Positions 1,703 through 62,895 of a stretch of 64,000 nucleotides of DNA are shown one piece after another. Under the pieces are notes generated by a model. The model ran no database searches. It was not told the origin of the DNA and was given only the letters and a program-made list of their open reading frames with translations. Numbering within the stretch: position 1 is the stretch's first letter; each line of letters opens with the position of its first letter. The DNA is from Octopus sinensis. Taxonomy: Eukaryota. A program made the position numbers and the translations under genes. The stretch spans positions 11,036,001 through 11,100,000 of the forward strand of contig NC_043008.1 of the NCBI RefSeq assembly GCF_006345805.1, in the 5' to 3' direction.

Positions 1703-1738
<36 letters not shown>

Positions 1739-2662: not shown

Positions 2663-2664
2663 GC

Positions 2665-2803
2665 GGTATTCAACTGGTACTTATTTTATCGATTCCGGAA
2701 GGCAAAATCGACCTCGGCGGAATTTGAACTCTGAACGGAATGACAGACGAAATACGGCTAAGCATTTTGCCCGGCGTGCTAATGATTCTGCCAGCTCACC
2801 GCC
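2665..2803 (-). mobile_element. SINE family A (tRNA head, B box GAGTTCAAATTCC), 3'-partial
   Basis: Reverse complement of ggcggtgagctggcagaatc...gagttcaaattccgccgaggtcga...aagtaccagttg. Confidence 0.85.
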
Positions 2804-2967
2804 TGAGAAGACAATCTAATATTTCAAAAAATAAAAAAAAATGTATTCAACAAATATACTTTTGAAGAAATTGCTTTTAAGAAAATAAAAATACAAGAAT
2901 AAATGTCTAGCTACGGAGATGTAATAGCAGAGCAAGTGACCTGATCTGAGATTGTGTGCTAGAACGA

Positions 2968-3167
2968 AAACAATTGCAGCGTGGAAGGTGTTTATAAGCC
3001 ATTTAAGAAACACACAAAAAACGTTAGATTCACTTCAATATTTAAATTTAATTTGCCAAAATATTTTCGTCGCTTTGAGACTGAGACCTGTTCACTGACA
3101 AAATTCCGCGCTCACGTTTTTGTGTTTCTTAAATTGCTTATAAACACCTTCTACGCTGCTATTGTTT
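2968..3167. repeat. Inverted repeat, ~55 bp arms and 89 bp spacer (fold-back or MITE-like)
   Basis: 2968-3024 aaacaattgcagcgtggaaggtgtttataagccatttaagaaacacacaaaaaacgt vs 3114-3167, whose reverse complement is aaacaatagcagcgtagaaggtgtttataagcaatttaagaaacacaaaaacgt. Confidence 0.85.
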
Positions 3168-3439
3168 ACGTGTGTAATATTTAATATTTACTGCTGATAA
3201 TAGTGACTTCAAAGTTTTACAAATGGTGACTGAATAGATGTGCGTGAATTATCCAGTGTCAGTAGAGCTTCGAAGTCCTCATTAGGAAGAATTATTGAAA
3301 ATTTGATGAAGATATTTCTAAAGTATTTTCCCCCTGAGATACAATCTGATGATTCCTTCTCTTGCTAGAAATCTGAAGTAATGGAGACATAATCTAGTTT
3401 AATCATAACAACGGTGACCTCGATAAAGCCAACAATTCT

Positions 3440-3646
3440 AATAATAATCGTTTCTTATTATAGGCACGAGGCCTGAAATTTGTGGGGAGGGGGTAAGTCG
3501 ATTCCATCGACCACAGTACTCAACTGGTTCTTAATCGACCCCGAAAGGATGAAAGGCAAAGTTGAACATGGCGGGATTTGAACTCAGAACGCTAAGCATT
3601 CCGCTAAGCATTCCGTCCAGCGTTCTAACGATTCTGCCAGCTCGCC
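3440..3646 (-). mobile_element. SINE family A, tail type 2
   Basis: Same head and central domain; tail aaatttcaggcctcgtgcctataa...(att)n; internal 12-bp duplication gctaagcattcc. Confidence 0.85.
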
Positions 3647-3868
3647 ACATTAACAATACTACTGATAATAAAACAACAGCAACAATAATAAATAATAATA
3701 ACAATAATAATAATGATGATGATGATAATAATAATAATAATAATAATGATAATAATAATAATAATATAATAATACCAAGAACAGTAATAAAATATATTCA
3801 GCGATATTCTTTAGTCGCTAGTCACCTACATTAGTGATTCGCTTTCTGTTGTTATTGCACTAAGAGTG

Positions 3869-3906
<38 letters not shown>

Positions 3907-3929
3907 AATAATATATATATATATATATA

Positions 3930-3973
<44 letters not shown>

Positions 3974-6067: not shown

Positions 6068-6288
6068 GGCAGCGAGCTGGAAGTATCGTTAGAATGCCGG
6101 ACAAAATACTTAGCGGCATTTCGTCCGTATTTATGTTCTGAGTTCAAATTCTGTCGCAGTTTACTTTGCCTTTCACAATTTCGTGGTCAATAAAATAAGT
6201 ACCAGTTGAATACTGAGGTCCATATAATCGACTACCCATCACCACCGCCAAAATTTCTGGGTTTGTACTTATCACAGAAAGGGTTATG
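6068..6288 (+). mobile_element. SINE family A, tail type 2
   Basis: ggcagcgagctggaag...gagttcaaattctg...actttgcctttcac...aagtaccagttg...aaaatttctgggtttgtac. Confidence 0.8.
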
Positions 6289-6682
6289 CCATGTAGACAC
6301 TCCTTAGTTTGTCATAAATGATTTATGACCCAAATTGTGATTATATTAAATCCCGCATATTATTGGGAAATTAAATGTTGGACTTAATTCACGGAAATGA
6401 ATATTGAAAATAGTGACGTTTCGGTTCTCAGAATAAATATATAAATACTAATTGATACTGTAAGTTAGTGTTTAAAGACATGCACATTGATACCTCACTA
6501 TTCTTGAACAAGAAATACTCCACACGCTGTCTTGTAAAAGTATTGTATTAAAGAGTGATGTTTTATAAATTGTTTCACTAATCAGATATCCCTGTCTGTA
6601 TTTTTAATAACAGGATAATACAATATGATAAGATCCATAACATTTCCGAAGACATAAAAAAAGTGGTATACGTTAAGAGAAA

Positions 6683-6913
6683 GGCGGTGAGCTGGCAGAA
6701 ACGTTAGCACGCCGGGTGAAATGCTTTGCAGTATTTCGTCTGCCGCTACGTTCTGAGTTCAAATTCCACCTAGGTCGACTTTGCCTTTCATCCTTTCGGA
6801 GTCAATAAATTAAGTACCAGTTACGCACTGGGGTCGATATAATCGACTTAATCCGTTTGTCTGTCCTTGTTTATCTCCTCTGTGTTTAGCCCCTTGTGGG
6901 CAGTAAAGAAATA
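6683..6913 (+). mobile_element. SINE family A, full length, tail type 1, with 18-bp TSD
   Basis: Full head to ...agccccttgtgggcagtaaagaaata. TSD ggtatacgttaagagaaa (6665-6682) / ggtatacgttaaaaggaa (6914-6931). Confidence 0.95.
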
Positions 6914-7590
6914 GGTATACGTTAAAAGGAATGACGAATACAGGCAACCAAAGCTCTATCCCAGATTCATTTGGATGGGAGGGTACTGCCATCATCTACT
7001 GTACGTTTTGTTCTTTGATAAAGCCAAAAAATACGATTTTATTTCTTAAAACTACAAAGGCTTATCTTGAAGCAACGTCTTTCAGTTGAAAACGTAGCCT
7101 TAGGACACAAATTTGGATCAATAAAGTTCCCTACCACTGGAAGCTATATAATAGCAAATGCTTTGATTTCTAATGAAACCGCTTTTCCACAAAGGAAGTA
7201 TACAATTTAACTTAAAACTGTATTGAATTTTGTCTGAGTTTCATTATCTTGTATTTGTATTATGCAGCATTGCTTCAAATTATACATATGGAAATGCGCT
7301 CAAACTTTCACATTGCACATCTGCGCAGCATGCATATACATTCACAGATATATTTATTTACACACACACTCACAAACACGTATACACACACAAACACGTA
7401 TACACACACAAACACGTATACACACACATACGCATGATGAAATTATATATGCATACATATACATATATATATATAATATATATATGTTATATATATATAT
7501 ATACATATATATATACATATACATATATATATACGTGTGTATATACATATATATATATATATATATAACAGATAAGCACGCACGCACACA

Positions 7591-8239: not shown

Positions 8240-8466
8240 GGCGGCGAGTTGGCAGAATCGTTAGCACGTCTGGCAAAATGCTTTGCGGCATTTCGCCCGT
8301 CGCTACGTTCTGAGTTCAAATTTCGCTGGGGTCAACTTTGCTTTTCATCCTTTTGGGTTCGATAAATTAAGTACCAGTTGAGTACTGGGGTCGATATAAT
8401 CGACTTATCCTCTATCCCCAAATTTCAGGCCTTGTGCCTATAGTATGATTATTATAAAGAAATACA
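8240..8466 (+). mobile_element. SINE family A, tail type 2, with ~14-bp TSD
   Basis: Head ggcggcgagttggcagaatc, tail cccaaatttcaggccttgtgcctatag; flanks aatatgatatgggt (from 8223) / aatatgatttgggt (from 8467). Confidence 0.9.
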
Positions 8467-8761
8467 ATATGATTTGGGTATTAATAGCTGTGAATGCGCA
8501 GATATAGACCTTCACTTATCAAAGCAACACTTCATGCTTTCGGAGAAAAAATAGCTACTACTTTTAGCGTATCAAGATAGCACAGAGACATTGGTTACAT
8601 TTTGAATGTTCTATATAAAGTGACACCATTCAAGAAATTATTGTAGAATGTATATGAAGTAGTATCTACGTTTGTCTTCTCTAAATTCTTTGTATTATGA
8701 CATCGCCAATGCCTCTAGCACCCATTCTGTTCTTCCATCTTCTTTCCACTTCTCTTAACAA

Positions 8762-10521: not shown

Positions 10522-11117
10522 CATGTACTTATATACACAAATGTACATAGATACAAACATAAACACACACACATACACACACACATATATATATATGAAT
10601 ATATAGATATATATAGATGATTTATGTATATATTATTTATGAGGTATATGTGCACTACGCAATGTTGCACGATATGCACACATGCAGGTATTCTAATGTA
10701 AATAAGACAATACGAACACAAATTCTCGTTAATATATACACCCACATATTATAGACATATGTATACTTTCACGTAGATATGGATGTCGGTAAATTTTAGG
10801 GTTACATAACTGTACTGTTGTTAAAGGTGTAGCTGGTTCCATTGTTTATCTCCGTTACTGTACAATATATACTGACATTATATATAGATTATAGGTTAAT
10901 GATATTATGTTTGTTTAATTCTATGATCTGTAATGTTTGAGAGATAAATTCTTTATATTTCACATCCATAAATAACATTTTCAATAAGGGGCTTAAAGCA
11001 AGCGTCTTAGCAGTAACTTTAAAAACACTCGAGAGATATTCCATTTCATGTGTAATAACGAAAGTAATGGACGATACTCGGTAACATCATATGAGCGTTA
11101 ATATGTAAAGCTTATAA

Positions 11118-11592
11118 GGCGGCGAGCTGGCCGAAACGTTAGCACGCCGGGCGAAATGCTTAGCGAAATTTCGTCTGTCTTTATGTTCTCAGTTCGAATT
11201 TCGCCGAGGTCGACTTTGCCTTTCATCCTTTCGGGGTCGATTAAATAAGTAGCAGTTACGCACTGGGGTCGATGTAATCGACTCAATCCGTTTGTCTGTC
11301 CTTGTTTGTCCTCTCTGTGATTAGCCCCTTGTCTGTGATTAGCCCCTTGTGGGTAGTAAAGAAATAGGTATTTCGTCTGTCTTTATGTTCGGAGTTCAAA
11401 TTCCGCCGAAGTCGACTTTGCCTTACATCCTTTCGGGGTCGATTAAATAAGTACCAGTTACGCACTGGGGTATATATAATTGACTTAATACCTGTATCTG
11501 TCCTTGTTTGTCCCCTCTGTGTTTAGCCCCTTGTGGGCAGTAAAGAAATTGGTATTTCGTCTGCCGTTACGTTCTGAGTTCGAATTCCGTCG
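11118..11592 (+). mobile_element. Head-to-tail array of three SINE A units
   Basis: Full unit to gaaata|11366; second unit restarts at internal ggtatttcgtctg (11367); third restarts at the same site (11551) and is truncated. Confidence 0.92.
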
Positions 11593-12713
11593 TTTTGTTT
11601 CTAACATTATCGAATGTCTCCACTTATTTCTAAGGCAATCTGTGAAATTTCAAGGGCGATGTTTTGTACGCATTGTAGCCTTGAAAAGGCACAGAGTGTA
11701 TAGAAGATTTTGCTGCTTTCCTATATATTTCTATGCGGCTCAATATATATTTGGGGAGCAGGTGTTATGAGCAGACGGATGAAATGTTACTTGTGACAAA
11801 CTGCACAACGCTCTCACGTTTCAAGTCGTCAGATTTTAAGAAAACAACAAATCATGTTCGGCCACACGTCTTTATTTCTTATAGCACTGAATTATTCTGA
11901 TATGTGTATACAGGTAACTAGAATATCACACGGAAACACCTCAGGATAGGTTTCAAATTTGATATTCAAAAGCAAAATGGTGAGTGCAGTATTTCAAAGA
12001 AAGTTTCTTGCTTCAACCTGCACATGATAAATTACACGTTGTCATTTCCTAATCTTTCTTTTATTCCAAGATGCAGATCGTTGAGATTTTGTAGCTAAGA
12101 AGCAATTCAATTTTCTTGAAAACGAAGCTACAGGGACTAAAACTAGCTCTGCCAATGCGAACTTGTCATATATATAAAGTAGCCTTGTCTCTTTAAATGA
12201 AATCACACATATTAAAACTAGGCAATTATTTGCTTTGGGGCTTGCATGCGATCCACGATGTCGCAGCTTACAAATTTAAAAGCATATGAACAGATAGTTG
12301 AAAGATAAGAGAAACCATTAGACTTTGAACAATACAGCTATGTTAAACATATTACAGAATCTAAAATCTGAGGGCGATAATGTTGTGGTGAAAATGTTAT
12401 GCGTTGATTTGTTCTCGAAGATTAGTTGAACATGCAGAGACTAATAAATCTTTTTCACTATCTTCAAGTATCCCGAAGCACGAATATATATTAATCAACT
12501 AATAACAATGGAAATCATGACAGTTCATTTATTCTCATATCAGTGCTACTACATACATTCATAGTTACATTGTATTCTAAGAGTCTGTGTACTTATACAT
12601 ATACACATAGAAATACACACACACACATACACACGCGCGCACACACTCACACACATACTCACATACAAACACACTCACACACACACGCAGACGAACACTC
12701 GCATGTATATACC

Positions 12714-12944
12714 TATTTCTTTATTACCCACAAGGGGCTAAACATAGAGGGGACAAACAAGGACAGACATAGGTATTATGTCGATTACATCGACCCCAGT
12801 GCGTAACTGGTTCTTAATTTATCGACTCCGAAAGGATGAAAGGCAAAGTCGACCGCGGCGGAATTTGAACTCAGAACGCAGCGGCGGACGAAATACCGCT
12901 TAGCATTTCGCCCGGCGTGCTAACGATTCTGCCAGCTCGCCGCC
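12714..12944 (-). mobile_element. SINE family A, full length, tail type 1, with 11-bp TSD
   Basis: TSD atgtatatacc at 12703-12713 and 12949-12959 (ggtatatacat on the element strand). Confidence 0.95.
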
Positions 12945-21547: not shown

Positions 21548-21778
21548 TATTTCTTTACTACCCACAAGGGGCTAAACACAGAGGGGACAAACAAGGACAA
21601 ACAAACGGATTAAGTCGATTGTATCGACCCCAGTGCGTAACTGGTACTTATTTAATCGACCCCGAAAGGATGAAAGGCAAAGTCGACCTCGGCGGAAATT
21701 GAACTCAGAACGTAGCGGCAGACGAAATACCGCTAAGAACTTCGTCCGGCGTGCTAACGGTTCTGCCAGCTCACCGCC
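21548..21778 (-). mobile_element. SINE family A, full length, tail type 1, with 12-bp TSD
   Basis: TSD tacacttatata at 21536-21547 and 21783-21794. Confidence 0.95.
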
Positions 21779-22152
21779 TATGTACACTTATATAGTCTTC
21801 AGAATTACCTCTATACTACTGTTTTGTTTTCAGCATTACCTCAATAATAGTCTATACCATTCGCTATTATCTGTATGATTCCAAGACTAGGGACTAAAGT
21901 ACTACTGAGGATCAAACACTCAGGACAACACTATTCTACTATGGGGAGACTATCGAATATATTGCTGCACAATATAGCCAACTTTATAGCACGACTGGAT
22001 TTTATAGACTACTACAGAGACACTACTGATATGTATAGGGTAGTGTAGAGGTAGAGCTATAGACTAACGTGCAAGTACTACTGAACTATGTAGACAATTG
22101 CAGAAAGACTACTGGCTATTATAGATTATGGTAGAAACGTTATTGAGAACTC

Positions 22153-26890: not shown

Positions 26891-27090
26891 CGTTAGCACA
26901 CCAGGTAAAATGCTTAACGGCATTTCGTCCGTCTTTACGTTTTGAGTTCAAATTACGCTGATGATGACTTTATCTCGCATACGCTTTCAGGTTCATAAAA
27001 TAAGTACCAGTTAAGCACTGGAGTTGATTTAATCAACTTACCCACTCCCCTGAAATTGCTGGCCTTGTACCAAAGTTTGAAACCAATGTT
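26891..27090 (+). mobile_element. SINE family A, tail type 2, 5'-partial and degenerate
   Basis: gttagcacacc...gagttcaaattac...aagtaccagttaagcactgg...gaaattgctggccttgtacc. Confidence 0.75.
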
Positions 27091-29064
27091 TCTGTATAAT
27101 ATATTGCAAACTATATCTAATCGGAAATTGAACTCACGTAAAGGTAAATAACTAAATCTAGTATTTGGAACGCCGTACTACGAATTACATAGAAACTGCG
27201 AAAGAAAGTTAATGAAAAACGATGATGATTTTTCAATGCAATGGACACTATTATAACACACACACACACACACATAGACACATTTCTTCACACATATACA
27301 CATGGATATGTGTGTGTGGAGTGTTTGAATACATAATCTGCCTTTCCACGTACACAGGTACCATTTAACTTTCTACTGTATTGGCTTTGTTGAAGTAACT
27401 ATTTATTTCGTATCCGAACTATGTAATAGATGAGAGAGAGAGAGAGTGAAAGTGAGGGCGGGGAGAATGAGAGGGAAAGCGATAGAAAGATAGATCAAAT
27501 GGAGCCAAGAGAGAAGGTATAATGAACATGAAGGTTGCGGTTGGGATGAAGTTTGGTGTGAATGTTATGGAAAAATCAATTCTTTAAGAAAGAATGCCTT
27601 GAGCAAATTTGTTGAAGTCTATTAGAAGATATACGAAGAATAATTTCAGGGTTTCTCTTTAATACCATTGGGTTTCTAAATAAGCGCTGAATTGAATTTG
27701 AGACCAATTCTGTGCGAAATCACACCAAAGTTTGAAGCAATCGCCAATATCTGTGTAGGAAGAAAAAAGAAAAAAATTACGATGACATAAATATATCAAT
27801 CAGACTTGGAAATCTGATTCAGCCGTTGAATGGCGACAGCAGAGTGGGGTGGTTGGGGGACAGAGACACTAAGACAGTAGGATTGAGCGGATGCTATTTA
27901 TAACTATTGCCAGTCAGCTTAAATGTCTGCTAAAGTTTTCGCAACTAATAATTGAAACCCACGTGTCCTATCAACTGATACTACAAAAACAAATAAACTA
28001 ATATCACTGAAGGAATACGAAAAAGTGGCGAAATATAATTCCAGCAGAGTAACATACCAAAAAGTAATATCCTAATTGCAAGAATTTGGCAATCGATCTA
28101 AACAAGTATATTGATAAAACGTGTCGTAAGACATTGGTGAACCGAACTGACTCAGGTGTTGATTTGGTCAATAACTACTTTGTTTTTAATCGTATCATGT
28201 TCATAGAAGTTACTGTTGTCTCTTGTCTGAGATTCTCACTTTAGACATTCTGGGCATCATCATGAATCATCAATCAATACTGTAAAAATCAGTTCCCAGT
28301 TTCAAAACTTCTAATATCATATTAATAGATGCACGCTTCGAATACCGTTTCTGACTTTTTACTTGCAGAAAATATAAAGACAATACCTAGAGTTCAATGA
28401 AGGAAAATCAAATATTGAAGACGACACATAAATAAAACCGGCCTACATTCATATGAAGGCACGTACACAGAGACACATATAATTATTTATATAGATATGA
28501 AAATGTCAACCGTAATTTACTTACTAGTCTATGTTTCCATCTATTTGACATCATCAGTGAAACGTTTCCAATACGAAGTACATGGTTGCCTTCATTAACA
28601 TTTGTTAGTATTTATATATTTTAGACGACATTCTTTACTGGCAGTGATCAATTCTTGCCTATGCATGTAATCAAAACTATTTGATGCTATGTTGAACATG
28701 GGAAGCAATCACCCAATATAAACGATAGCAAAGTTACAGAGCAAGTATATGAATTCTGCCACACATTGTTCGTGGCGGAATAACTCGTTAGACACACAAC
28801 ATTTTCACCTTTAATTCCACGTTTGTATTTGGCGATATTTCGTCTCATAACGAACGATACGTTGCAGACATACACTGGCACTAAAATAAGTTGATGAATA
28901 TATATATAAAAAAAAAATTAGTTGGAATTTTCATTTGGAATTTCTCGATTTGGATGACTAACGACAGTGTCTCTCTCTCTCTGTATTGTTATTTGTGTAA
29001 ATAGATATGTGCACGCATATGTTAGTACATACCTGCGCAAGTATGCATGTAAATGCACACCGAC

Positions 29065-32753: not shown

Positions 32754-33195
32754 CAGGGAGTGTTCAAAACTGCCCGAATTCAAAGGTGTTGCGAAAGGCC
32801 TAGCTGGAGGCACAATTTTTCGACTTCTTTTACAGGACTCAGAAATACTAAAGGACCGTTGCCATAACTTTCTGAATCTGAATATATTGAATAAAATCAT
32901 AATTAAGTGATTCTCTTGTATATTCTAGTATCGAAAACCAGGAACCTTTAGCACCACCTTGTGTCTATCTATCTATCTATCATCACAATGGACGGACGGT
33001 AGTCATATCGGCTCCAAGTAAGTTGGCCACTTTTACATGTTTAAAACTCCTTGTTGTCAAATATTTTGTTTTAATCGTTGTGCAAATTCATTCACTAAAA
33101 ACCTGAGAATTATTCACGTAGAATTCCGCCCCTGTATGGGCGAAATTACAAAAAAACTTTCAAACTTTCGTGGGTTTTTTTAGCCATTTTTCATT

Positions 33196-35202
33196 TTGAA
33201 AATGGCAACTAGAAACCACGTGGCTAGCCCGCCAGTCATGCAGAACGGTAGCAAAACACTATTGCTACCACTAGCTGCTAAACATCGCAGCGTGAACACC
33301 GCTGTCACCACCATCACCACCACCAACAACAACACCAACAAATCTAACGTCGCATTCACCATCGCCGCGACCAAAGACATTAACTTAGATTTCCCCTCAC
33401 TCCCCACACCACTTGTTGATGATAAAGGGACAGAGAAAGGGATTTCAAAAATGAATACAAACGAAAACATGAATGCCAGCCCCACCACCATCACCACCAC
33501 AACAACAACAACACGAAATTGGCACAAAGCCGCCTACCAAAGACAACACCGCCAAACCCAACACCACTACTACGACGTCAAATGCTACATCAAGCCTTCT
33601 GCTGCTAATACCGCCAACACCAACACCACTACCATGACTTCAATTAACACTGCCACAATTAACACTTCTACTGCCAAATTCAAAACGAATTTTGCGGACG
33701 TAACAAAACAAAAAAGAACAATTGTAACATTCACCACACAAGAGATAAACCGCACAAAGGCACTCTTCTCCAAAGAAGGAGACAAATTGCACCTTCATAT
33801 TCCACACACATCGTGGAAAACACGCAAAAAAAAACAATAATTTATAATAAAGTAATAACAAAAAAACAAGAAGAACAGAAAATGCACCGCAGGAAAAAAT
33901 CGATAAATGCCTTCGTCCTGTATGGGACTCCAAGGAATATATCAGTTGGGGAAACAAATTTGGTACAGTCCAAGTATGTTTCCTCAACGAAAGTTTAGCA
34001 AAACGTTTTTCCACATTGGAGCTACTTCGGACGACTTGGTAATGATACCAGTCTATTTAAACAAAAGGGTCACGAAAGTCCAAATAAAAAACATACCATT
34101 TGATGTCGAAACACAATGGGTGGTCTCTGCCATCTGCTTTGAAATGTCAGAGACAATGTCAGAGACAAACATCCTGGAAATCGCGGTTCTAGGAGAGAAA
34201 GACTATGTGGGCAAATCAATCGAATTCCTGCTTCAATTGGATGAAGCAGCAAGAGAGAAGATACCCACCGCTATAGAACTGCCAGGAGGCTACAAACTCT
34301 ATATAGTGGTAGAGGGCAGGCGACCACGCTGCTATTTGTGTGGAAGCGAAACACACTTGAAAAAGACGTGCCCAACCACTGCACACCAAGAGCAACAACA
34401 ACAACCACTACCACAACCAAAGCACTCTGGAAAAAAAGCTCTACTACCCACACCACCATCAACACAGAAGACGACAAGAGAAGCACACCAAGCTAATCCG
34501 TCATCAACCAAAACCACTCGACACCTGGAAAAATACCAACACTACCATCAACAGCAAAACCCAAAGGAACAGAAAAACAAAGAAAACACACACAAACTGA
34601 TCCCCCATCCCTTATACCGCACTCAACACACACAAACACTCAACAACCAACAACAACGAAAACAACAACACAACCACTTACACAGACATACATAGAAGCC
34701 CACAACATACCCCTACCCCCTTCTGATTCCTCAGAAATTTCGTCGGAAGACGAAACCAGTGAGGAATGGCAAATAGCTACAAAAAGAAGGAAAATAAAGA
34801 GCAGAAACACAACCAAACCAAATGCAAACACGAACAAAGCAGGGGGAAATACATCTCCCGAAGACATTTCAAACCCAACGCAAACAACAGCCACACCAAC
34901 ACACAAAAACATATACAGCAAACATGCTCACAGCCATAGACACCAAAAACACAAATTTGATGGAATACATCCAATCAAAAACAAACATAACAGAAGATGA
35001 CATAAAAACAAACAACCACCCATACACAACACCACCAGACCACATCAAAATAATACACATCTCCAAAAGTCTGCACCACACACTCAAAGGCATTTTCCCC
35101 AGTGCGGTTGGTAAATGCCAAAAATATCTCACAAAGAAACTGTACTGGGATCTTCTCGAGGACAAACCAACGGAGGAGAAAGCAAAAACTTTCGAGCAGT
35201 AA
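33196..35202 (+). pseudogene. LINE ORF1 (RRM-like region plus CCHC zinc knuckle), split by frameshifts
   Basis: Pieces 33196-33840, 33813-33998, 33907-34695 and 34822-35202; RVTKVQIKNIPFDV and RRPRCYLCGSETHLKKTCP (CX2CX4HX4C). Confidence 0.85.
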
Positions 35203-35233
35203 GTAACCCTCTGTATTCTAATTCATTAGAACT

Positions 35234-38200
35234 ATGATCAAGATTGGTTGTGTAAATGCGCGTGGCTTGGAAACAAGGGTACCTCTTAAATGACATAAAG
35301 TCACATAAGTTAGAAATCATAGCCATAAGCGAGACCAGACTCCACAATCCGCGGGCCCTAAAGACCATGTTTGGCGGACAGTTCAACATTTATTTTTCCC
35401 CCTGTCTGCCGAGAATGGGCGGTAGTGGCACCGCGGTACTTTTTCACAAGAGTCTGGATCTCAATGTAAGGACAATATTCGTAGACCCGGAGGGTAGACT
35501 GGTCGTCCTGGATGTCGACGGCAGCAATGGGTGCGCTTTTCGGCTCGTATCAGTTTACGCACCGCCCTTAACAGGTCGGGCGGATTTCTTTCAACGTCTA
35601 GAAGTTTTCTTGGGAACGTCTCGTCCTTTACTCTTAGTGGGGGATTGGAATGCTACCTTGGACACGCATGTAGACTACGTGGGTAGAGATAGGAATAGAC
35701 GGGGATGCAAATGCCTCAGAGACCTGCTCAGACGCTTTCAACTGTCTGACAGGTTTCGACTAGACCACCTGAATGCGCCAACGTGGACATGGAGCAACCG
35801 CATCGGGTCGTCGAGATCGTATCTAGATAGGATACTGTGTAGGACAGTAGATAGAGATAGCATAGGATGTCCACAATTCCACATAGTCAGCTACACGGAT
35901 CACAAACTTGTGACATGTACGCTAGACTTAGGTAAGACACTTAGGCAGGGTCCCGGATACTGGAAACTAAACGCGTCTTTCCTATCGAGACAAGTTTTCA
36001 GAGACCGGATTAGCACACTAGTAAGAGGGCTTTGACGGGAGCCATCATCAACAACAAATGGTGGTTTGCCCTCAAGAGAGCAGTAAAAGCAGAAGCGATT
36101 AGGTACAGCAAAGCACTAGCCATAGATAGAAATAGAGTAGAGGGTGAGCTAGTTAAGAAGCTAGAAGAGGCAATTAGAAGCGGCATCGCATCCGACGTTT
36201 TGGCGGCGAGGTTGGCCCTCGACCAACACTTCAACGCCAAACACGAAGGATGTGCTGTCAGAGCTAGGATGCGTGCTCTAAGGAACGAAGGTGTTGGAGC
36301 CGCGAGAGAGGCCCCGGTGGCAGAGGCGCAACAGGGCAACAAGCCACCATTCGGTCACTGGTAGATGAACAGGGGCGCGAATTGCTCGAGCCAAGTAAAA
36401 TGTGTGAGGCCTTTCAGCAGCATTTTGCCCGACTGTTCGGAACGAGTGGAGGGCAAGAACGTAGGGTGGACTTCAGTGCCTACCTACATAGCCTACCACG
36501 ACTCTCGACAAAAAGGCAGGGTGCTGCGAAGGTGCCATCACGGCGGCGGAAGTGCGGGAAGCGATGGCAGAATGCTCGAGGGACAAATCACCGGGTTTGG
36601 ATGGTCTACCCTACGAGCTTTACAATTGTATGCCAGACTTGTTTGGAGATCTCTTGCGGCGGTGTACTGCACAACTGGCAGCAAAACGGGAGCATTCCTG
36701 GTTTTGCGAGCCGAGGCCGTAACACTGCTGAAGAAGATCTAAACAAGGGAAATGTAATAGATAACTTTAGGCCCATCACTCTGCTTAATGCAGACTTGAA
36801 AATTTTGGCCAAGGTACTAGCCAAGAGGTTGGCGCTTGTCATCGAGAAACTGGTCGACAAGGCGCAAACATGCGCCGTGCCAGGCCGGACCATCCATGAC
36901 AACCTCCATCTGATGCGCTACATCATAGACAGGGTAGTTAACGAACCTGGCATGGGTGGGGCCCTGATCAACTTGGATCAATCAAAAGCCTTTGATAGGG
37001 TAGACCATCGATACTTGGAGGCAGTCCTGAGAGCGGCTGGTTTCGGTCCCGTCTTCCGCGGCTGGATAGCTGCCTTGTACAGAGGCATCCGTTCGGTAAT
37101 TCGCGTAAATGGACATCTATCGAGACCTTTCGACATTGCACGTTCGGTCCGTCAGGGATGCCCCCTCTCGGCGCTTCTATACGTATTGACTCTTGAGCCA
37201 CTACTGCGAAAGCTGGCGACTCTAAGGGGCATCCCGCGAGAATTGGGATGCGGGACGAGCGTGTCTGCATACGCGGACGACGACGTCACCGTCATAGTGT
37301 CTAGCCACGAGCACATCGAGCTGGTCGGCGAGACACTGAAAAACTACGAAGCGGTGACAGGAGCGAAAATCAACCGGGAAAAGTCAGTGGGCTTGCGACT
37401 AGGCACCTGGAGAAGCAAGCCCATGCCGTCCACCAGCGCCTCCGTCGTGGGACGCTGGACCGACGGCCCGGTTGAGTTGCTCGGTCGGTTTGGTTTGGTC
37501 CGGACCTCCAAGTGGAGAAGCTGGAACGAGATAACGAGTAGGGTGGTCACTCTCGCCCGGCAATGGGCCGAGAGGAAACTGTCCCTAAAAGGTCGAGCGG
37601 AGGTGGCGAACACGTACATCGCGTCCGTCATCTACTACCGCCTGACCGTCGTACCTTGTCCCGACCCTACCATCACCAACTACAACGCATCCTCTTTCGC
37701 TTCTTGTGAAAGGATGCGTCCCGATGGTCAGGCGATCCATTTGCTGTCAACACCCGTTAAAAGGAGGGCTGGGCATGCCGTGGTTGATGATGCGCAGACA
37801 CGCGCTGAGACTGCGACATCTCTGGCTCTATGTAGACGACGGTGAACAGGTGTGGTCGCCGTTTGTGAGGCACGCTTTCCCGCAGCTCGTCTCCATGACC
37901 GAACTGCAGTCGTGGATCAAAAAGAGGCCGAGGAAGGGCGAATGGCACCGCGAGTGTTGCGTTGCTCTCAAGCAACTCTGCCGTCCTGGGTCGACCTTAA
38001 GTGACTTCAACACAACCAAAGCATTCTATAGGGGTTTAGTGGAGGGGAGGTACGACGACGAGCTCGGGGCGAACCTGGACGTCGACGAGGAGTACCTGAC
38101 CCGCCTGTTCGGGACGACTTTCGGGCCAGGGCCCATGGACAACTTCCAGAGATCCCTGGCCTGGCAGTGCTACCGAGAAGCGCTACCCGTTCGGGATAAG

Positions 38201-38652
38201 CTCTACAGACACGGCTCGAGAAACACGGGGCCGACCTGCCGAGATGCGGTCAGAGCGACGAAACCGTTCTGCACGCACTCGTTCAGTGTCCAACAATTTC
38301 CGACCTGTGGGCTTATGTCGAACAACTGCTGTCACGTGTGGGACGAGTCGGTTTATCAGCTGAGTCTATCGTCAATATTGTCACGCCTCCTTCCTTCAAA
38401 CGGGAAGGAAGAGCTATTTTCATCATCCTTGTGGCTATGGCGAAAGAATGTATCTGGTGGACGCGTCTGAAAGATTGGAGACAAACACTTTCCTCTCTGG
38501 TCAATCTCTCATCAACTTCTTCAAGTACCACTTGAAAAGGAAAGTGAGAGTAGAGAGGCAAGTTTTGTCTAGCGAATGTTTTAAAAAAATGGGTGAATGT
38601 AGCAAGAATGGCACGTATGAATGACGAAGCCACCTTGAGCATAGTCCTATGA
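35234..38652 (+). pseudogene. LINE ORF2 (APE endonuclease, reverse transcriptase, C-terminal zinc finger), about 10 small indels
   Basis: MIKIGCVNARGL; IIAISETRL; LVGDWNA; SRSYLDRI; SYTDHKLV; GPGYWKLNASFL; NFRPITLLNADLKILAKVLAKRL; LDQSKAFDRVDH; RQGCPLS; SAYADDDVTV; TC(P)RCGQSDETVLHALVQCP. Stop after ATLSIVL at 38650-38652. Confidence 0.95.
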
Positions 38653-38956
38653 ACCCAGAAATCGAAAACAGAGAGTTGCTTATTTGCAAAAAAAAAAAAA
38701 AAAAAAAAAAAAAGAAATATAAAATGTGACTTCATTGACCGAGGTTACCGTGGTCTTTTCCGCAGGCTTTTCTTTCCACGGTAACCTCACCTGTCCTCCC
38801 CTTTACACTTCATATTGACATTTCTGTGATAACGATCCCTATTGATCATTTTTTTTCCTCTCCCCCCCTTTTTTTTTTTTTTTTTTTTTTTAACCCCCCT
38901 TATTTTTGTCCTCTTTCTCTCCTTTTACGATCCCTTTGATCGAACCTCCCCCTTCC

Positions 38957-38987
<31 letters not shown>

Positions 38988-39071
38988 CCTTCAAAAGAAA
39001 AGCTCTACCTTGTAATTTGTTCTATCTGTGTGCAGCCCTGTGTGGCTAATAAAGAAACATATCTAGAAACT

Positions 39072-39087
39072 TATCTATCTATCTATC

Positions 39088-39134
<47 letters not shown>

Positions 39135-39186
39135 GTCTGTCTGTCTGTGTCTGTCTATCTATCTATCTATCTATCTATCTATGTAA

Positions 39187-39265
<79 letters not shown>

Positions 39266-39360
39266 TCTATCTATCCATCCATCTATTTATCTATCTATCT
39301 ATCTATCTATCTATCCATCCATCTATTTATCTATCTATCTATCTATCTATCTATCAATCA

Positions 39361-39447
<87 letters not shown>

Positions 39448-39478
39448 AATCTATCTATCTACCTATCTATATATATAT
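39072..39478. repeat. (TATC)n/(TGTC)n/(CATC)n microsatellite
   Basis: Direct reading. Confidence 0.97.
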
Positions 39479-41839: not shown

Positions 41840-43015
41840 CTTCATTAGGGTCGTATTCTGTCTAGTATTTGTTCAAAATCTACATTCAGAGGATAATGCG
41901 AGAGCAATACAGAAAGAACACGGCATCAAAATACATGCCTTGTATATTTCTTATTTCTTTACTGCCCATAAGGGGCTACACATAGAGGGCACAAACAAGG
42001 ACAGACAAACGGATTAAGTCGATTATATCGACCCCAGTGCGTAACTGGTACTTGTTTAATCGACCCCGAAAGGATGAAAGGCAAAGTCAACCTCGGCGAA
42101 ATTTGAACCCAGTACGTAGCGGCAGACGAAATACTGCTAAGCTTTTGGCCCGGCGTGCTAACATTTCTGCCAGCTCGCCGCCGCAGAATTAGATTAGAAA
42201 TATGCCTTGCATATTTCTAATCTACGATATGCAGACGATACTGCACTACTTCCCAAGACTGAAGTCCGACTACAAGAAATAATAAATAGAGTCGAGTACG
42301 TCTCAAATATATATGATCCTTATCTCAATCATACGAGAACAAAGTCACATTCGTAGGAAAAGAGAAAGAAAATGTTAGCATAAAGATGGACATTTACAGG
42401 CTCAAACAGTTCGAATTGAGCTTATAACTTGGGGTCTATTTCTCTGATGACGCCACATGTAAGAAAGAAATTACGACAGGGATAGTCATGGAGAGAACGT
42501 TCATGGAAAAGCTTACTAACTTCTGGTTTAGCAAAAGTGTCCCAACGCAGTTCAGTTAAAAACAAAGTTATTACGAGCAATCATTTGGCCAATAGACATT
42601 CATGGTTGCGAAGCATGGACTGTAACAAGTTTTTGGAAGACATAATCCATGCGTTCCAAATGTTGATGAATAGGACAATGTTACGAATCTATGACAAGGA
42701 CAATCAGACAAATGGATAGGCGTTACAATAAGCAGCTGGAAGTTGACAACTCCTGAACATTGTGAAAAAAGCGAAAGCCCATCGATTATGGCCATAGTCG
42801 AAGAAGTAGAAGTCTCGAAGACATTATAATCGAAGGAAGAGTAACGCAGAGGGTTGTATATCAAGGGGCAGATAGGGAACGCAATAGATGAGACGATATC
42901 CAGAGTTGGTTGGACAAGAATGATTAGATAACTGGAGACCTCGCGCTTAATCGAGAAATCTTACGCTGTTGAATTATCAATGCGTTGCAGGCGTAAGATA
43001 CATGGTGACGTCAGC
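41840..43015 (+). mobile_element. Old RTE-clade LINE 3' fragment (RT to C-terminus), interrupted by a SINE
   Basis: G.ILS..F.IY...IMRE...GIKI | ISNLRYADDTALL..TE..LQEIINRVE; KLLRAIIWPI..GCEAWT; MLRI; YGHSRRSRSLEDIIIEGRV; R*DDIQSW. Many stops and indels. Confidence 0.85.
41952..42184 (-). mobile_element. SINE family A, tail type 1, inserted in the RTE with a 17-bp TSD
   Basis: atgccttgtatatttct (41935-41951) / atgccttgcatatttct (42202-42218). Confidence 0.95.
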
Positions 43016-46115: not shown

Positions 46116-46481
46116 CGAGGCCAACAATTTGGGGGAGGTCTAAGTCGATTAAATCGACCCAAGTGTTCAGCTGATATTTATTTTATCGACCCCGAATGGA
46201 TGAAAGGCAACGTCGACCTCAGCGGAATTTGAAGTCAGAACATAAAGACAGACGAAATACCTATTTCTTTACTACCCACAAGGGGATAAACACAGAAGGG
46301 ACAAACAAGGACAGACAAACGAATTTACATCGACCCCAGTGCGTAATTGGTACTTATTTAATCGACCCCGAAAGTATGAAAAGCAGAGTCGACCTCGACG
46401 GAATTTGAACTCAGAACGTAACGGCAGACGAAATGCGCCTGCGCATTTCACCCGGCGTGCTAACGTTTCTGCCAGCTCGCC
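46116..46481 (-). mobile_element. Two-unit SINE A array: tail-1 unit joined to a tail-2 unit at the internal GGTAT
   Basis: Junction at 46261|46262 (element strand gaaata|ggtatttcgtctg). A short plus-strand head fragment lies at 46075-46114. Confidence 0.9.
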
Positions 46482-46559
46482 ACATTGATATAGTACCAAT
46501 ATTACAAAGACATTTAGTCAAGATAATTCAGTCATTATTAAATTGTTATGTTAGCTTCA

Positions 46560-46760
46560 AATTTGGCATAGGGCTAGCAATTTCGGGTGAGAGGTTAAGT
46601 CAATTACATTGACCCCCAGTGCACAACTGGTAGTTATTAAGCGACCCAGAGAGTATGAAAAGTAAAGTCGACGTCGCAAGAATTTGAACTCAGAACGTAA
46701 GGTCGGGAGGAATGCAGCTAAGCATTTATTTCGGCGCAGTAATGATTCTTCCTGCTCCAA
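46560..46760 (-). mobile_element. SINE family A, tail type 2, degenerate
   Basis: gaatttgaactcagaacg, aaagtaaagtcgac, aatttggcatagggctagcaatttc. Confidence 0.78.
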
Positions 46761-50119: not shown

Positions 50120-50715
50120 TTAATCATCTCCGAAAGCATGAAAGGCAAAGTCAATCTCGGTAGGATTTGAACTCAGAATTTAAGGACGTGCAAAATGCCG
50201 CTAGACACTTTGAGCGGCATGCTAACGACTCTATTATCAATAATGAAGGCGGCGAGCTGGCAGAAACGTTGGCACGTCGGGCGAAATGCTTGGCAGTAAT
50301 TCGTCTGCCGCTACGTTCTGAGTTCAAATTCCACCGAGGTCGACTTTGCCTTTCATCCTTTCGGGGTCGATTAAATAAGTACCACTTAGGCACTGGGGGT
50401 CGATATAATCGACTTAATCCGTTTGTCTCTCCTTGTTTGTCCTCTCTGTGTTTAACCCCGTGTGGGTAGTAAAGAAATAGGTATCTCGTCTGCCGTACGT
50501 TCTGAGTCCAAATTCCACCGAGGTCGACTTTGCTTTTCATCCTTTCGGGGTTGCTAAATTAAGTACCTGTTGCGTACTGGTGTTGATCTAATCGACTAGC
50601 CACCTCCCCCCAAAAAGGAGGAAAGTTATAGTCGACCTCGGTGTAATTTGAATTCAGAGCGTAAAGTCGGATGAAATGCCGCTGAGCACTTTGTCCGGCA
50701 TGGTAACGATTCTGC
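50120..50715. mobile_element. SINE A cluster: minus copy (50120-50235), plus two-unit array (50248-50615), minus copy (50630-50715)
   Basis: Array junction gaaata|ggtatctcgtctg at 50479|50480; the second unit ends with a tail-2-like ccacctccccccaaaa. Confidence 0.9.
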
Positions 50716-62559: not shown

Positions 62560-62633
<74 letters not shown>

Positions 62634-62634
62634 C

Positions 62635-62665
<31 letters not shown>

Positions 62666-62824
62666 CTTACCTATCTACCTACCTACCTACCTACCTACCT
62701 ACCTACCTACCTACCTACCTATCAATCTATCTGTGTGTGTGCGTCTCTGTCAGGCTGTCAATGCATCCATCCATCCATCCATCCATCCATCTATCCATCC
62801 ATCCATCCATCCATCCATCCATCC

Positions 62825-62895
<71 letters not shown>

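What the first reader, a model, noticed from the sequence alone, without database searches (positions are those of the whole stretch)
39016..39059. Tx1-clade LINE 3' end matches the tail of SINE family A: a candidate LINE-SINE pair
Seen: LINE 39016-39059 tttgttctatctgtgtgcagccctgtgtggctaataaagaaaca aligns ungapped at 34/44 with the SINE A tail-1, e.g. tttgtcccctctgtgtttagccccttgtgggyagtaaagaaata in the 11.5, 12.7 and 21.5 kb copies. An extra ccttg match lies just upstream across a 3-nt gap. Both can form a small hairpin (AGCC/GGCT in the LINE, GCCC/GGGY in the SINE). Known: many SINEs borrow the 3' tail of the LINE that mobilises them; the usual partners are CR1, L2 and RTE, while mammalian L1 recognises poly(A). 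Inference: this Tx1-type element, or its family, is the autonomous partner of the commonest SINE here and recognises a specific tail. I cannot tell whether this pairing is already published.
Basis: partly seen in the sequence, partly recalled or inferred. Interest (0 to 1): 0.85.

Follow-up and report, generated by a model that had tools for sequence, protein, structure and literature searches.

The report
Octopus LINE and SINE share tail
A dead L1/Tx1-type jumping gene in this octopod genome ends in a short conserved hairpin-containing tail that the most common short repeat (SINE) here also carries, so this LINE lineage is very probably the engine that copies the SINE: a textbook mechanism, but apparently not yet described for this LINE group in animals.

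Summary
Window 39016-39059 matches the SINE tail-1 consensus at 34/44 ungapped. The best match elsewhere in the window outside SINE copies is 26/44.

The 44-mer is the true 3' end of a ~6.1 kb degenerate APE+RT LINE (about 32982-39059). This LINE sits between (TATC)4 and (TATC)~100.

Five further 3' ends of related LINEs finish with the same module, TCTGTGT – 4-bp GC hairpin with CTTGT loop – AATAAAGAAAT. They come from Octopus sinensis, Argonauta hians (three) and one JGI contig of unidentified source. None has a poly(A) tail. So the tail belongs to the LINE and is not a neighbouring SINE remnant.

In Argonauta the LINE and SINE tails are 41/44 identical and end at the same base. In O. sinensis a sister LINE matches the window's SINE tail at 40/48, against 37/47 for the window copy on the same gapped measure.

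The pairing therefore holds for the LINE lineage. This dead copy is probably not the actual driver.

Mobilisation through tail recognition is inferred, not shown. Tx1 membership was not tested by phylogeny.

I found no published L1/Tx1-group tail-sharing pair in animals; Repbase and Dfam could not be checked. Verdict: new member of a known kind, moderate interest.

The parts
32966..32981 (+). 5' flank: (TATC)4 directly abutting the LINE 5' end. Either the left half of the target microsatellite or a target-site duplication.
   Evidence: Only four (TATC)>=3 loci exist in the 64 kb on both strands, and two of them bracket the LINE on the same strand.
32982..39059 (+). Degenerate L1/Tx1-group LINE of about 6.1 kb. 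It has a 5' UTR, a low-complexity ORF, an ORF1 with a CCHC knuckle, ORF2 (APE, RT, C-terminal zinc-binding domain) and a 3' UTR. It is the only copy in the window.
   Evidence: ORFs; Pfam Exo_endo_phos and RVT_1; homologues carry RVT_1 + zf-RVT; self-BLAST finds no second copy.
33907..34695 (+). ORF1-like reading frame containing a CCHC zinc knuckle (CYLCGSETHLKKTC).
   Evidence: Translation. It has no Pfam hit.
35256..36035 (+). Apurinic/apyrimidinic-type endonuclease domain of ORF2.
   Evidence: PF03372, E = 3.3e-16.
36382..37845 (+). Reverse transcriptase domain of ORF2.
   Evidence: PF00078, E = 9.3e-29. It is 64% identical to an Argonauta hians protein. That protein's best PDB match is human L1 ORF2p, E = 7e-43.
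37706..38653 (+). C-terminal zinc-binding (zf-RVT-like) region of ORF2. It is broken by at least three frameshifts, and the stop is at about 38651-38653.
   Evidence: Three-frame translations compared with intact homologues P0001, P0002 and P0005. The BLAST alignment runs to 38623.
38654..39059 (+). 3' UTR, collinear with the 3' UTRs of related LINEs: a purine-rich start, a CCTCCCC...ATTTCT block, a T-rich stretch, then the tail. A30 (38688-38717) and the T runs (about 38870-38892 and 38957-38981) are internal homopolymer expansions, not element ends.
   Evidence: Alignment A3; tandem repeat table.
39005..39059 (+). LINE 3' tail shared with SINE A tail-1: CCTTG, TTTGTTCTATCTGTGTGC, the hairpin, then AATAAAGAAACA.
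   Evidence: 34/44 ungapped; 37/47 gapped; conserved in five other LINE 3' ends.
39034..39047 (+). Predicted RNA hairpin: AGCC (39034-39037), loop CTGTGT, GGCT (39044-39047). It is followed by AATAAA (39048-39053).
   Evidence: Minimum-free-energy fold; pair table across 15 parsed tails.
39053..39076 (+). Two tandem 12-mers across the 3' junction, AGAAACATATCT and AGAAACTTATCT (11/12 identical). They look like a terminal duplication, so the exact end may lie a few bases beyond 39059.
   Evidence: Read directly.
39072..39478 (+). 3' flank: (TATC)~100 microsatellite.
   Evidence: Tandem Repeats Finder.
6680..6916 (+). Full SINE A copy with tail-1 (tail at 6870-6913). Target-site duplication GGTATACGTTAA.
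11116..11588 (+). SINE A array: a full copy (its tail carries an internal 18-bp duplication), then a unit starting at SINE position 52 (11368-11553), then a partial unit (11552-11588). Tails at 11323-11366 and 11507-11550.
12711..12944 (-). Full SINE A copy with tail-1 (tail at 12714-12757). Target-site duplication GGTATATACAT.
21548..21779 (-). Full SINE A copy with tail-1 (tail at 21548-21591, 44/44 to the consensus). Target-site duplication TATATAAGTGTA.
41952..42182 (-). Full SINE A copy with tail-1 (tail at 41952-41995).
46141..46481 (-). SINE A copy with tail-1 (tail at 46262-46305) followed by a unit starting at SINE position 52.
50246..50597 (+). SINE A copy with tail-1 (tail at 50436-50479) followed by a unit starting at SINE position 52.

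Best explanation
**What it is.** Window 39005-39059 is the true 3' terminal module of an L1-group (most likely Tx1-type) LINE lineage of octopods. The module has three parts: a UCUGUGU block, a 3-4 bp G+C hairpin with a CUUGU-type loop, and AAUAAAGAAAU. There is no poly(A).

**How it most likely works.** The lineage's ORF2 protein starts target-primed reverse transcription on RNAs that end in this module. This is 'stringent' 3'-end recognition, as shown experimentally for eel UnaL2 and zebrafish L2 elements. SINE A tail-1 carries a homologous copy of the module at its own 3' end. Its RNA can therefore borrow the LINE's endonuclease and reverse transcriptase and be inserted with target-site duplications.

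**Which LINE drives it.** The window's LINE copy is dead, and its tail is only 77-79% like the SINE's. The active partner was or is a sister family of the same lineage.

**Shown:** the homology, its position at the very end of both kinds of element, its conservation across LINE copies and genera, and the absence of poly(A).

**Inferred:** protein-RNA recognition and trans-mobilisation.
For: 1. The match is 34/44 against a background maximum of 26/44 in 128 kb scanned, and it lies exactly at the LINE terminus.
2. The tail is intrinsic to the LINE. Six LINE 3' UTRs end in it: the window, L007 (O. sinensis), L001a, L001b and L008 (Argonauta hians) and L002. The four UTRs aligned (window, L002, L001a, L001b) are collinear. 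In L007 only SINE positions 194-238 match, so no SINE body is attached there.
3. There are independent same-genome pairs. The Argonauta LINE L001b and Argonauta SINE d are 41/44 identical. LINE L001b and the many Argonauta non-LINE elements carrying this tail nearly all end in GAAATCTAT. O. sinensis locus L007 holds a SINE A fragment (85.6% identical) and a LINE whose tail is 40/48 to SINE tail-1.
4. The hairpin is kept in 13 of 15 parsed tails. The outer pair varies (A-T, G-C, G-T). The second pair is G-C in all four LINE tails parsed and in the Argonauta SINEs, but C-G in most Octopus SINE copies, a change on both sides that keeps the pair. It is the minimum-free-energy element in all six folds.
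5. Neither LINE nor SINE junctions carry an A-run. This argues against poly(A)-dependent mobilisation.
6. The junction signatures are similar. SINE target-site duplications start with (G)GTAT or TATAT. The LINE's flank starts with TATC. Argonauta LINE L001b and the Argonauta SINEs end in ...TCTAT.
Against: - There is no functional evidence.
- The window's LINE copy is frameshifted, and its tail is 77% (ungapped) to 79% (gapped) identical to the SINE tail, lower than in classic pairs.
- Sister LINE families match better.
- No genome-wide search of other LINE clades (RTE, CR1, Dong-R4, all active in Octopus according to PMC13282606) could be run. A non-L1-group LINE with an even closer tail cannot be excluded.
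- The hairpin is only 3-4 bp, and its fold energies are not better than those of shuffles (z from -0.06 to -1.95).
- The covariation rests on two pair positions and on related sequences.
- The target-site comparison rests on about eight junctions.
Confidence: 0.75

Rival explanations
1. The real autonomous partner of SINE A tail-1 is a different LINE family. The window's element is only a relative that happens to keep the ancestral tail. The true partner could be a sister L1/Tx1 family with a GCCC/GGGY hairpin, or a LINE of another clade that acquired the same tail.
For: The O. sinensis LINE L007 (40/48) and the Argonauta LINE L008 (41/48) match SINE tail-1 better than the window copy (37/47). 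Both share the GTCCCCTCT(A/G)TGTTT block that the window LINE lacks. No LINE tail seen so far has the SINE's C-G second hairpin pair. The window copy is dead.
Against: All the better-matching LINEs found belong to the same ORF2 lineage. Their DNA identity to the window LINE is 66-75% and all have the RVT_1 + zf-RVT architecture. This refines the pairing rather than overturning it. No LINE of another clade with this tail was seen in about 160 kb of octopod sequence examined.
Confidence: 0.45
2. The 44-mer is not part of the LINE. It is a severely 5'-truncated SINE (or other tail-bearing non-autonomous element) inserted right next to the LINE's true end, for example after the A30 run at 38688-38717.
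For: An A30 run lies 35 nt after the ORF2 stop. Two long T runs lie further downstream. These could be read as ends of nested elements.
Against: The region after A30 is homologous, in the same order, to the 3' UTRs of L002 and both L001 copies. Five other LINE 3' UTRs end in the same tail with no SINE body attached. The window tail is closer to the Argonauta LINE tail (90.9% over 33 nt) than to the window's own SINE copies. Those copies score 35-44 of 44 against their consensus, whereas the LINE tail scores 34. The whole unit is bracketed by (TATC)n.
Confidence: 0.04
3. The similarity is chance, or convergence on a generic A/T-rich 3' end containing a polyadenylation signal (AATAAA).
For: Part of the match is the low-complexity AATAAAGAAA. 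The hairpin is short, and its fold energy is not better than that of shuffles.
Against: The score of 34/44 stands against a background maximum of 26/44. The non-A/T blocks TCTGTGT and GCCC..TGTGG are shared as well. The same relation is seen independently in Argonauta at 41/44. SINE tails have in fact lost the canonical AATAAA: AGTAAA in most window SINE copies and AATAGA in most Argonauta SINE tails.
Confidence: 0.01
4. The LINE and SINE are related only by history, through tail capture by template switching in either direction. The SINE is today mobilised by another route, such as a relaxed reverse transcriptase or target-site homology alone, so the shared tail has no recognition role.
For: The known Tx1-SINE link (crocodilian Tx1-Mar and SINEU, PMC4494074) was inferred from shared target preference. 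The junctions here show a recurrent TAT motif and repeated insertion at one internal SINE site.
Against: The tail, including its hairpin, has been kept at the very end of both LINEs and SINEs across octopod genera that differ by about 25-35% in the rest of the elements. The SINE tail tracks the LINE tail of its own genome in Argonauta. This pattern is expected under selection for recognition, not for a passive relic.
Confidence: 0.12

Closest known systems
Stringent-type LINE/SINE pairs with a common 3' tail (eel UnaL2/UnaSINE1, zebrafish ZfL2, tortoise CR1/Pol III SINE; Ohshima & Okada; Kajikawa & Okada 2002; PMC4176376; PMC3747384 Table 1)
   Same: The 3'-terminal 40-55 nt are shared between an autonomous LINE and a short non-autonomous element in the same genome. 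A small stem-loop lies near the end. There is no poly(A). A short repeat or microhomology occurs at the junction. Insertions have target-site duplications.
   Different: The known animal pairs involve L2, CR1, RTE/Bov-B, Rex1, I and Vingi LINEs. The 58-pair list in PMC3747384 has no L1-group LINE from an animal and no mollusc. Here the hairpin is only 3-4 bp, and nothing has been tested experimentally.
Stringent L1-clade pairs in plants and algae: maize/sorghum LINE1-1_ZM with ZmSINE2/3, and Chlamydomonas L1-1_CR with SINEX-3_CR (Ohshima 2012, PMC3472496)
   Same: An L1-group LINE whose conserved 3' end, with a hairpin supported by compensatory changes, is shared with tRNA-type SINEs. This shows that L1-group elements are not always poly(A)-dependent.
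   Different: Those are plant and green-algal L1 lineages that end in (T)n or poly(A). The present case is an animal (cephalopod) lineage, probably Tx1, that ends without a homopolymer, next to microsatellites.
Crocodilian Tx1-Mar LINEs and SINEU (Kojima 2015, PMC4494074)
   Same: A Tx1-type LINE proposed as the mobiliser of a SINE. Tx1 relatives insert into microsatellites: (TC)n, (TTC)n, (TTCC)n.
   Different: That pairing was argued from shared target preference (Mariner-N4_AMi) and shared 5' heads. Here the argument is a shared 3' tail, and target specificity is only hinted at: (TATC)n around the window copy, and (ATT)n after L002 and L008.
Ceph-SINEs of squid and cuttlefish with RTE-derived tails (Akasaki 2010; Kojima 2018, PMC5786205)
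   Same: They are cephalopod SINEs with LINE-derived parts.
   Different: Their partner is RTE, their body carries the Ceph domain, and they occur in decapodiform hosts. SINE A here has a different body and an L1/Tx1-type tail.
Mammalian L1 with Alu/B1 (relaxed, poly(A)-dependent)
   Same: The LINE belongs to the same broad L1 group (best PDB match human ORF2p) and has the APE + RT architecture.
   Different: Neither partner ends in poly(A). A specific shared tail is present instead.

Membership tests
LINE-SINE pair with common 3' tail (stringent type) | Significant sequence similarity between the 3' ends of a SINE and a LINE in the same genome | tested here: met
   Window: 34/44 ungapped against a background maximum of 26/44. 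Argonauta locus L001: 41/44. O. sinensis LINE L007 against the window's SINE consensus: 40/48; locus L007 itself holds a SINE A body fragment (85.6% identical).
LINE-SINE pair with common 3' tail (stringent type) | The similarity extends to the very 3' terminus of both elements | tested here: met
   The window alignment ends at 39059, just before the flanking (TATC)n, and at the last SINE base before the target-site duplications. The Argonauta LINE L001b and SINEs a-d all end in GAAATCTAT.
LINE-SINE pair with common 3' tail (stringent type) | The tail is a conserved feature of the LINE family, not of one copy | tested here: met
   Six LINE 3' ends from at least three genomes carry it. The four UTRs aligned are collinear.
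LINE-SINE pair with common 3' tail (stringent type) | A stem-loop in the tail supported by compensatory change | tested here: inconclusive
   A 3-4 bp stem is present in 13 of 15 parsed tails. There is one both-sided change (G-C to C-G) and a variable outer pair. It is the minimum-free-energy element in all six folds, but z-scores are only -0.06 to -1.95. The stem is too short and the sequences too few for a firm covariation test.
LINE-SINE pair with common 3' tail (stringent type) | The tail is required for retrotransposition, and the SINE tail is mobilised in trans by the LINE protein | not testable with these tools
   This needs a retrotransposition assay.
LINE-SINE pair with common 3' tail (stringent type) | No other LINE family in the genome has a closer tail | tested here: inconclusive
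   Within the window, no other non-SINE site exceeds 26/44. In other loci, sister families of the same lineage match slightly better. A genome-wide survey of other clades was not possible.
Tx1 clade (L1 group) of non-LTR retrotransposons | APE endonuclease + RT + C-terminal zinc-binding domain in ORF2; ORF1 with a CCHC knuckle | tested here: met
   PF03372 and PF00078 in the window. PF13966 (zf-RVT) in intact homologues. The CCHC motif is in ORF 33907-34695. These features are shared with L1 proper, so they do not discriminate.
Tx1 clade (L1 group) of non-LTR retrotransposons | RT-domain phylogeny places the element within Tx1 rather than L1 or another clade | not tested
   No Tx1 or L1 reference set was available. 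Indirect support: the best PDB hit is human L1 ORF2p (E = 7e-43) against R2 (E = 1e-22). Published RT-based surveys report Tx1 as the L1-group clade in molluscs, and L1-Tx1 families as active in O. vulgaris.
Tx1 clade (L1 group) of non-LTR retrotransposons | Target-sequence-specific insertion (multicopy genes, transposons or microsatellites) | tested here: inconclusive
   The window copy lies between (TATC)4 and (TATC)~100. L002 and L008 are followed by (ATT)n. L004 forms a head-to-tail tandem array. L007 and L001b are followed by unique sequence. There are too few copies to decide.
tRNA-derived SINE | Short, dispersed, non-coding element with target-site duplications | tested here: met
   The element is about 235 bp. 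There are about 20 copies or fragments in 64 kb. Four full copies have 11-17 bp target-site duplications.
tRNA-derived SINE | 5' head recognisably derived from a tRNA, with A and B boxes | tested here: not met
   ARAGORN finds no tRNA-like gene in the window. Rfam finds nothing at E <= 1 in 6650-6950. A B-box-like GAGTTCAAATTCC is visible by eye only. The head may be a strongly diverged tRNA or of another origin.
Relaxed, poly(A)-dependent L1 mobilisation (Alu-like) | Both partners end in a poly(A) tract at the 3' junction | tested here: not met
   There is no A-run at the 3' junction of any LINE or SINE copy examined.

The most novel reading that the evidence does not exclude
A whole lineage of L1/Tx1-group LINEs in coleoid cephalopods uses stringent recognition of a tiny 3' hairpin module instead of poly(A). 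It is the engine behind the very large octopod SINE expansion. Different SINE subfamilies (tail-1, tail-2) are matched to different LINE sub-lineages by repeated tail swapping. The recurrent TAT/(TATC)n/(ATT)n junctions reflect a shared endonuclease or priming preference. This would be the first documented animal L1-group LINE/SINE system based on tail sharing, and it would name the driver of the main octopus repeat class.
Probability: 0.45. Interest if true: 0.6.

Novelty: new member of a known kind. Interest (0 to 1): 0.5.

Why it matters
**Why octopus SINEs matter.** SINEs make up about 11.6% of the Octopus vulgaris genome, and almost all recently active SINE families there are 'unclassified' (PMC13282606). 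SINE fragments are enriched in octopus brain transcripts (PMC9115989). The papers I could read do not say which autonomous element copies these SINEs. Attention has gone to an RTE element.

**What this finding adds.** The SINE tail is the 3' end of an L1/Tx1-type LINE lineage, conserved from Octopus to Argonauta. This gives a concrete, testable candidate for the driver.

**The wider question.** It would also add an animal example to the very few L1-group LINEs known to recognise a specific 3' end rather than poly(A). So far these are known only in maize, sorghum and Chlamydomonas (PMC3472496). That bears on whether stringent recognition is ancestral in the L1 group.

**Practical use.** Tail type could serve to classify the 'unclassified' octopus SINE families.

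Tried and rejected
- **Self-BLAST of 33000-39100 against the window.** It found no second LINE copy, so no in-window consensus was possible.
- **Scan of JGI metagenome contigs** with a C-terminal ORF2 profile. There were 207 pattern matches and none was confirmed. I did not use the extra scan.
- **Exact-protein look-up** of the window's APE ORF, meant to identify the source genome. It is not on record. The species therefore remains 'an octopod, Octopus-like'.
- **ARAGORN and Rfam on the SINE head.** Neither gave a tRNA match.
- **Full-text search for four sequence strings** from the SINE and the tail. No papers were found.
- **Albertin et al. 2015 (PMC4795812).** The paper is not held. The supplement of Ohshima 2012 is not held.
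- **More distant LINE relatives.** L004 and L005 (about 50% ORF2 identity, unknown species) lack the AATAAAGAAAT tail. They carry a related GGCCTTGTG(A)CC motif about 50-70 nt before an AATAAA. I did not use them for the main argument. L006 (cuttlefish) showed no recognisable tail in the motif scan.
- **The idea that A30 (38688-38717) marks the LINE's true end.** Rejected because the downstream UTR is collinear with relatives.
- **The extended stems UCU/AGA and UGU/AUA flanking the hairpin.** They are possible in most tails. They never vary and are absent in L002, so they give no evidence either way.
- **The second (TATC)n array at 62560-62895.** It has no adjacent tail-bearing element.

Full report
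**1. What is at the coordinates**

They lie 363 nt downstream of the end of a long, degenerate LINE.

The LINE's parts are as follows.
- ORFs at 35256-36035 and 36382-37845 carry an APE-type endonuclease (PF03372, E = 3e-16) and a reverse transcriptase (PF00078, E = 9e-29).
- A C-terminal region (37706 to about 38653) matches the zinc-binding end of intact homologues. It is spread over three frames.
- An upstream ORF (33907-34695) has a CCHC knuckle.
- It is the only LINE copy in the window.

The closest protein is from Argonauta hians (64% identity). Other close ones come from JGI metagenome contigs. A second search added Octopus sinensis. The window is therefore from an octopod. I could not identify the species.

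**2. Is the match more than chance?**

I built a SINE A consensus from seven window copies. I then slid its last 44 nt over both strands of the window.
- The eight SINE tails score 35-44.
- A shifted register of the internally duplicated copy at 11305-11348 scores 31.
- The LINE site scores 34.
- The next best site anywhere scores 26, and only four sites reach 24.

**3. Is the 44-mer really the end of the LINE?**

Three lines of evidence say yes.

(a) *Flanking repeats.* The element is bracketed by same-strand TATC repeats: (TATC)4 at 32966-32981 and (TATC)~100 at 39072-39478. There are only four (TATC)>=3 loci in the window.

(b) *Collinear UTRs.* The 406-nt stretch between the ORF2 stop and 39059 is collinear with the 3' UTRs of relatives. 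The shared order is a purine-rich start, a CCTCCCC...ATTTCT block, a T-rich stretch, then the tail. The A30 run and the two long T runs are therefore internal expansions, not ends of nested elements.

(c) *Related LINE ends.* Five further LINE 3' ends stop with the same module.

| Locus | Source | Tail as read |
|---|---|---|
| L002 | JGI contig | ...gggcccttgtggccaataaaagaaatc(att)n |
| L001a | Argonauta | |
| L001b | Argonauta | ...ttctgtgtcggcccttgtggctaataaagaaatctat |
| L008 | Argonauta | ...gtcccctctatgtttttgcccttgtggctaataaaagaaata(att)n |
| L007 | Octopus sinensis, CM016876.1 | ...ttgtccccctctatgtttgggcccttgtggctaataaagaaatt |

In L007 only SINE positions 194-238 match, so no SINE body is attached. 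The 'adjacent SINE remnant' reading is rejected.

**4. The pairing in other genomes**

Argonauta locus L001 happens to contain four tail-bearing short elements: three SINE A-like copies and one with a different or truncated body. L008 contains more.
- Their tails (ttctgtgttcggcccttgtggctaatagagaaatctat) are 41/44 identical to the Argonauta LINE tail L001b.
- LINE L001b and nearly all of these elements stop at the same GAAATCTAT, after which the sequences differ.
- At least two kinds of Argonauta non-LINE element with different bodies carry this tail.

In O. sinensis, locus L007 holds a SINE A fragment (85.6% to the window consensus). It also holds a LINE whose tail is 40/48 to the window's SINE tail-1.

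So the relation is reproduced in two further genomes. The SINE tail follows the LINE tail of its own genome most clearly in Argonauta.

**5. Which LINE is the partner?**

| LINE copy | Match to Octopus SINE tail-1 |
|---|---|
| Window copy | 37/47 |
| L007 (O. sinensis) | 40/48 |
| L008 (Argonauta) | 41/48 |

L007 and L008 share the GTCCCCTCT(A/G)TGTTT block that the window copy lacks. They are sister families of the same ORF2 lineage, with 66-75% DNA identity to the window LINE.

No LINE tail seen has the SINE's exact hairpin (GCCC/GGGY). The claim therefore holds for the lineage. The window's dead copy is a relative of the driver rather than the driver itself.

**6. Anatomy of the tail**

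In 13 of 15 parsed tails a 4-bp stem closes a CTTGT-type loop.
- The outer pair is A-T, G-C or G-T.
- The second pair is G-C in all four LINE tails parsed and in the Argonauta SINEs, but C-G in most Octopus SINE copies. This is a change on both sides that keeps pairing.
- This hairpin is the minimum-free-energy element in all six tails folded. With only 4 bp, the energies are not better than those of shuffles.
- Flanking blocks UCUGUGU and AAUAAAGAA can extend the helix, but they never vary and are absent in L002. They give no evidence either way.

Five of the six LINE tails keep a canonical AATAAA; L001a has AAGAAA. Most window SINE copies have AGTAAA and most Argonauta SINE tails have AATAGA. 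This fits a Pol II signal that Pol III-transcribed SINEs do not need.

No junction carries poly(A).

**7. Junctions**

- SINE target-site duplications are GGTATACGTTAA, GGTATATACAT, TATATAAGTGTA and AGAAATAT....
- Four junctions in three arrays join a SINE tail directly to SINE position 52 (GTATTTCG).
- The LINE's flank begins with TATC.
- Argonauta LINE L001b and the Argonauta SINEs end in ...TCTAT.

A common TAT-type junction is suggestive of one endonuclease or priming rule. It rests on few cases.

**8. Most likely mechanism**

Shown:
- homologous 3' modules at the extreme ends of an L1-group LINE lineage and of SINE A;
- conservation across octopod genera;
- no poly(A).

Inferred:
- the lineage's ORF2 protein recognises this module to start target-primed reverse transcription (stringent type), and the SINE RNA borrows it.

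**9. Comparison with what is known**

- Tail sharing is the classic criterion for LINE/SINE partnership.
- The 58-pair compilation in PMC3747384 lists L1-group partners only for maize/sorghum and Chlamydomonas. It lists no mollusc pair.
- Kojima 2015 linked crocodilian Tx1-Mar to SINEU by target preference.
- Cephalopod Ceph-SINEs are tied to RTE.
- The recent O. vulgaris repeat paper lists 13 active L1-Tx1 families and leaves SINEs unclassified, with no partner named.
- The octopus brain LINE paper concerns an RTE element.

I found no statement of this pairing. Repbase and Dfam entries could not be checked.

Tx1 membership is plausible. The best PDB hit is L1 ORF2p. Tx1, or RepeatMasker class L1-Tx1, is the L1-group lineage reported in mollusc surveys. 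There are also microsatellite flanks and a tandem array in L004. No phylogeny was made.

**10. Verdict**

The mechanism is inferred. This is a new member of a known kind, of moderate interest because it names a candidate driver for the dominant octopus repeat class and adds an animal case of a non-poly(A) L1-group LINE.

Noticed in passing
window 32966-32981 and 39072-39478: The LINE sits inside a (TATC)n microsatellite: four units on the left and about 100 on the right, on the same strand. Two related LINE copies are followed by (ATT)n (L002:2020-2105 and L008:9192-9205). This hints at microsatellite-directed insertion or templated terminal repeats, as in Tx1-clade Kibi and Koshi.
   Followed up: partly
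window 11116-11588, 46141-46481, 50246-50597: SINE A forms head-to-tail arrays in which a full copy is followed directly by a unit that always starts at SINE position 52 (junction ...GAAATAG|GTATTTCGTC). This occurs four times in three arrays. It could reflect preferred insertion at an internal GTAT site of older SINE copies, with homology-mediated 5' joining.
   Followed up: partly
window 3430-3505(-), 8396-8470(+), 27029-27100(+), 46535-46606(-), 6222-6295(+); L005:7680-7790; L004:6868-6960: A second SINE A subfamily has a different tail ('tail-2', CCCCAAATTTCAGGCCTTGTGCCTATAGTA...). It resembles the 3' region of more distant LINE relatives L005 (cactccccaaaaattcttgggccttgtgacc) and L004 (cggccttgtgcc). 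Different SINE tails may map to different LINE sub-lineages. The species of L004 and L005 are unknown.
   Followed up: partly
L004:348-11180: A related LINE (51% ORF2 identity) occurs as a head-to-tail tandem array with a 7547-bp period. The ORF set at 348-6180 repeats from 7895.
   Followed up: no
L001:8016-8655: In Argonauta a full LINE 3' UTR (tail a, diverged: AGCCAGGTGGCTAAGAAAGAAAT) is followed 130 bp later by a second LINE copy. That copy is 5'-truncated at about the stop codon, and its tail (b) is the one identical to the local SINEs. LINE-next-to-LINE insertion again suggests a site preference.
   Followed up: partly
window 39048-39053 versus SINE tails (e.g. 6902-6907); L001, L008: Five of the six LINE tails keep the canonical AATAAA. 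Most window SINE tails have AGTAAA, and most Argonauta SINE tails have AATAGA. This fits a polyadenylation signal needed only by the Pol II-transcribed LINE.
   Followed up: partly
window 39053-39076: The LINE's last bases are duplicated in tandem across the junction: AGAAACATATCT and AGAAACTTATCT, 11/12 identical. This may be reverse-transcriptase slippage or re-priming at the 3' end.
   Followed up: no
window 11305-11348: One SINE copy has an internal 18-bp tandem duplication of the hairpin region (tctgtgattagccccttg repeated twice).
   Followed up: no
protein P0122: A protein 72% identical to this cephalopod LINE's C-terminal domain is deposited at NCBI as 'MAG: zinc-binding domain-containing protein [Herbaspirillum sp.]'. 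This is very likely host (cephalopod) DNA binned into a bacterial metagenome-assembled genome.
   Followed up: no
window 6680-6916 (SINE head): The SINE head is not recognised as tRNA-like by ARAGORN or Rfam, despite a B-box-like GAGTTCAAATTCC. Its origin is unresolved. The body (…AAGTACCAGT..GC.ACTGGGGTCGAT..ATCGACT) is conserved between the window and Argonauta.
   Followed up: partly
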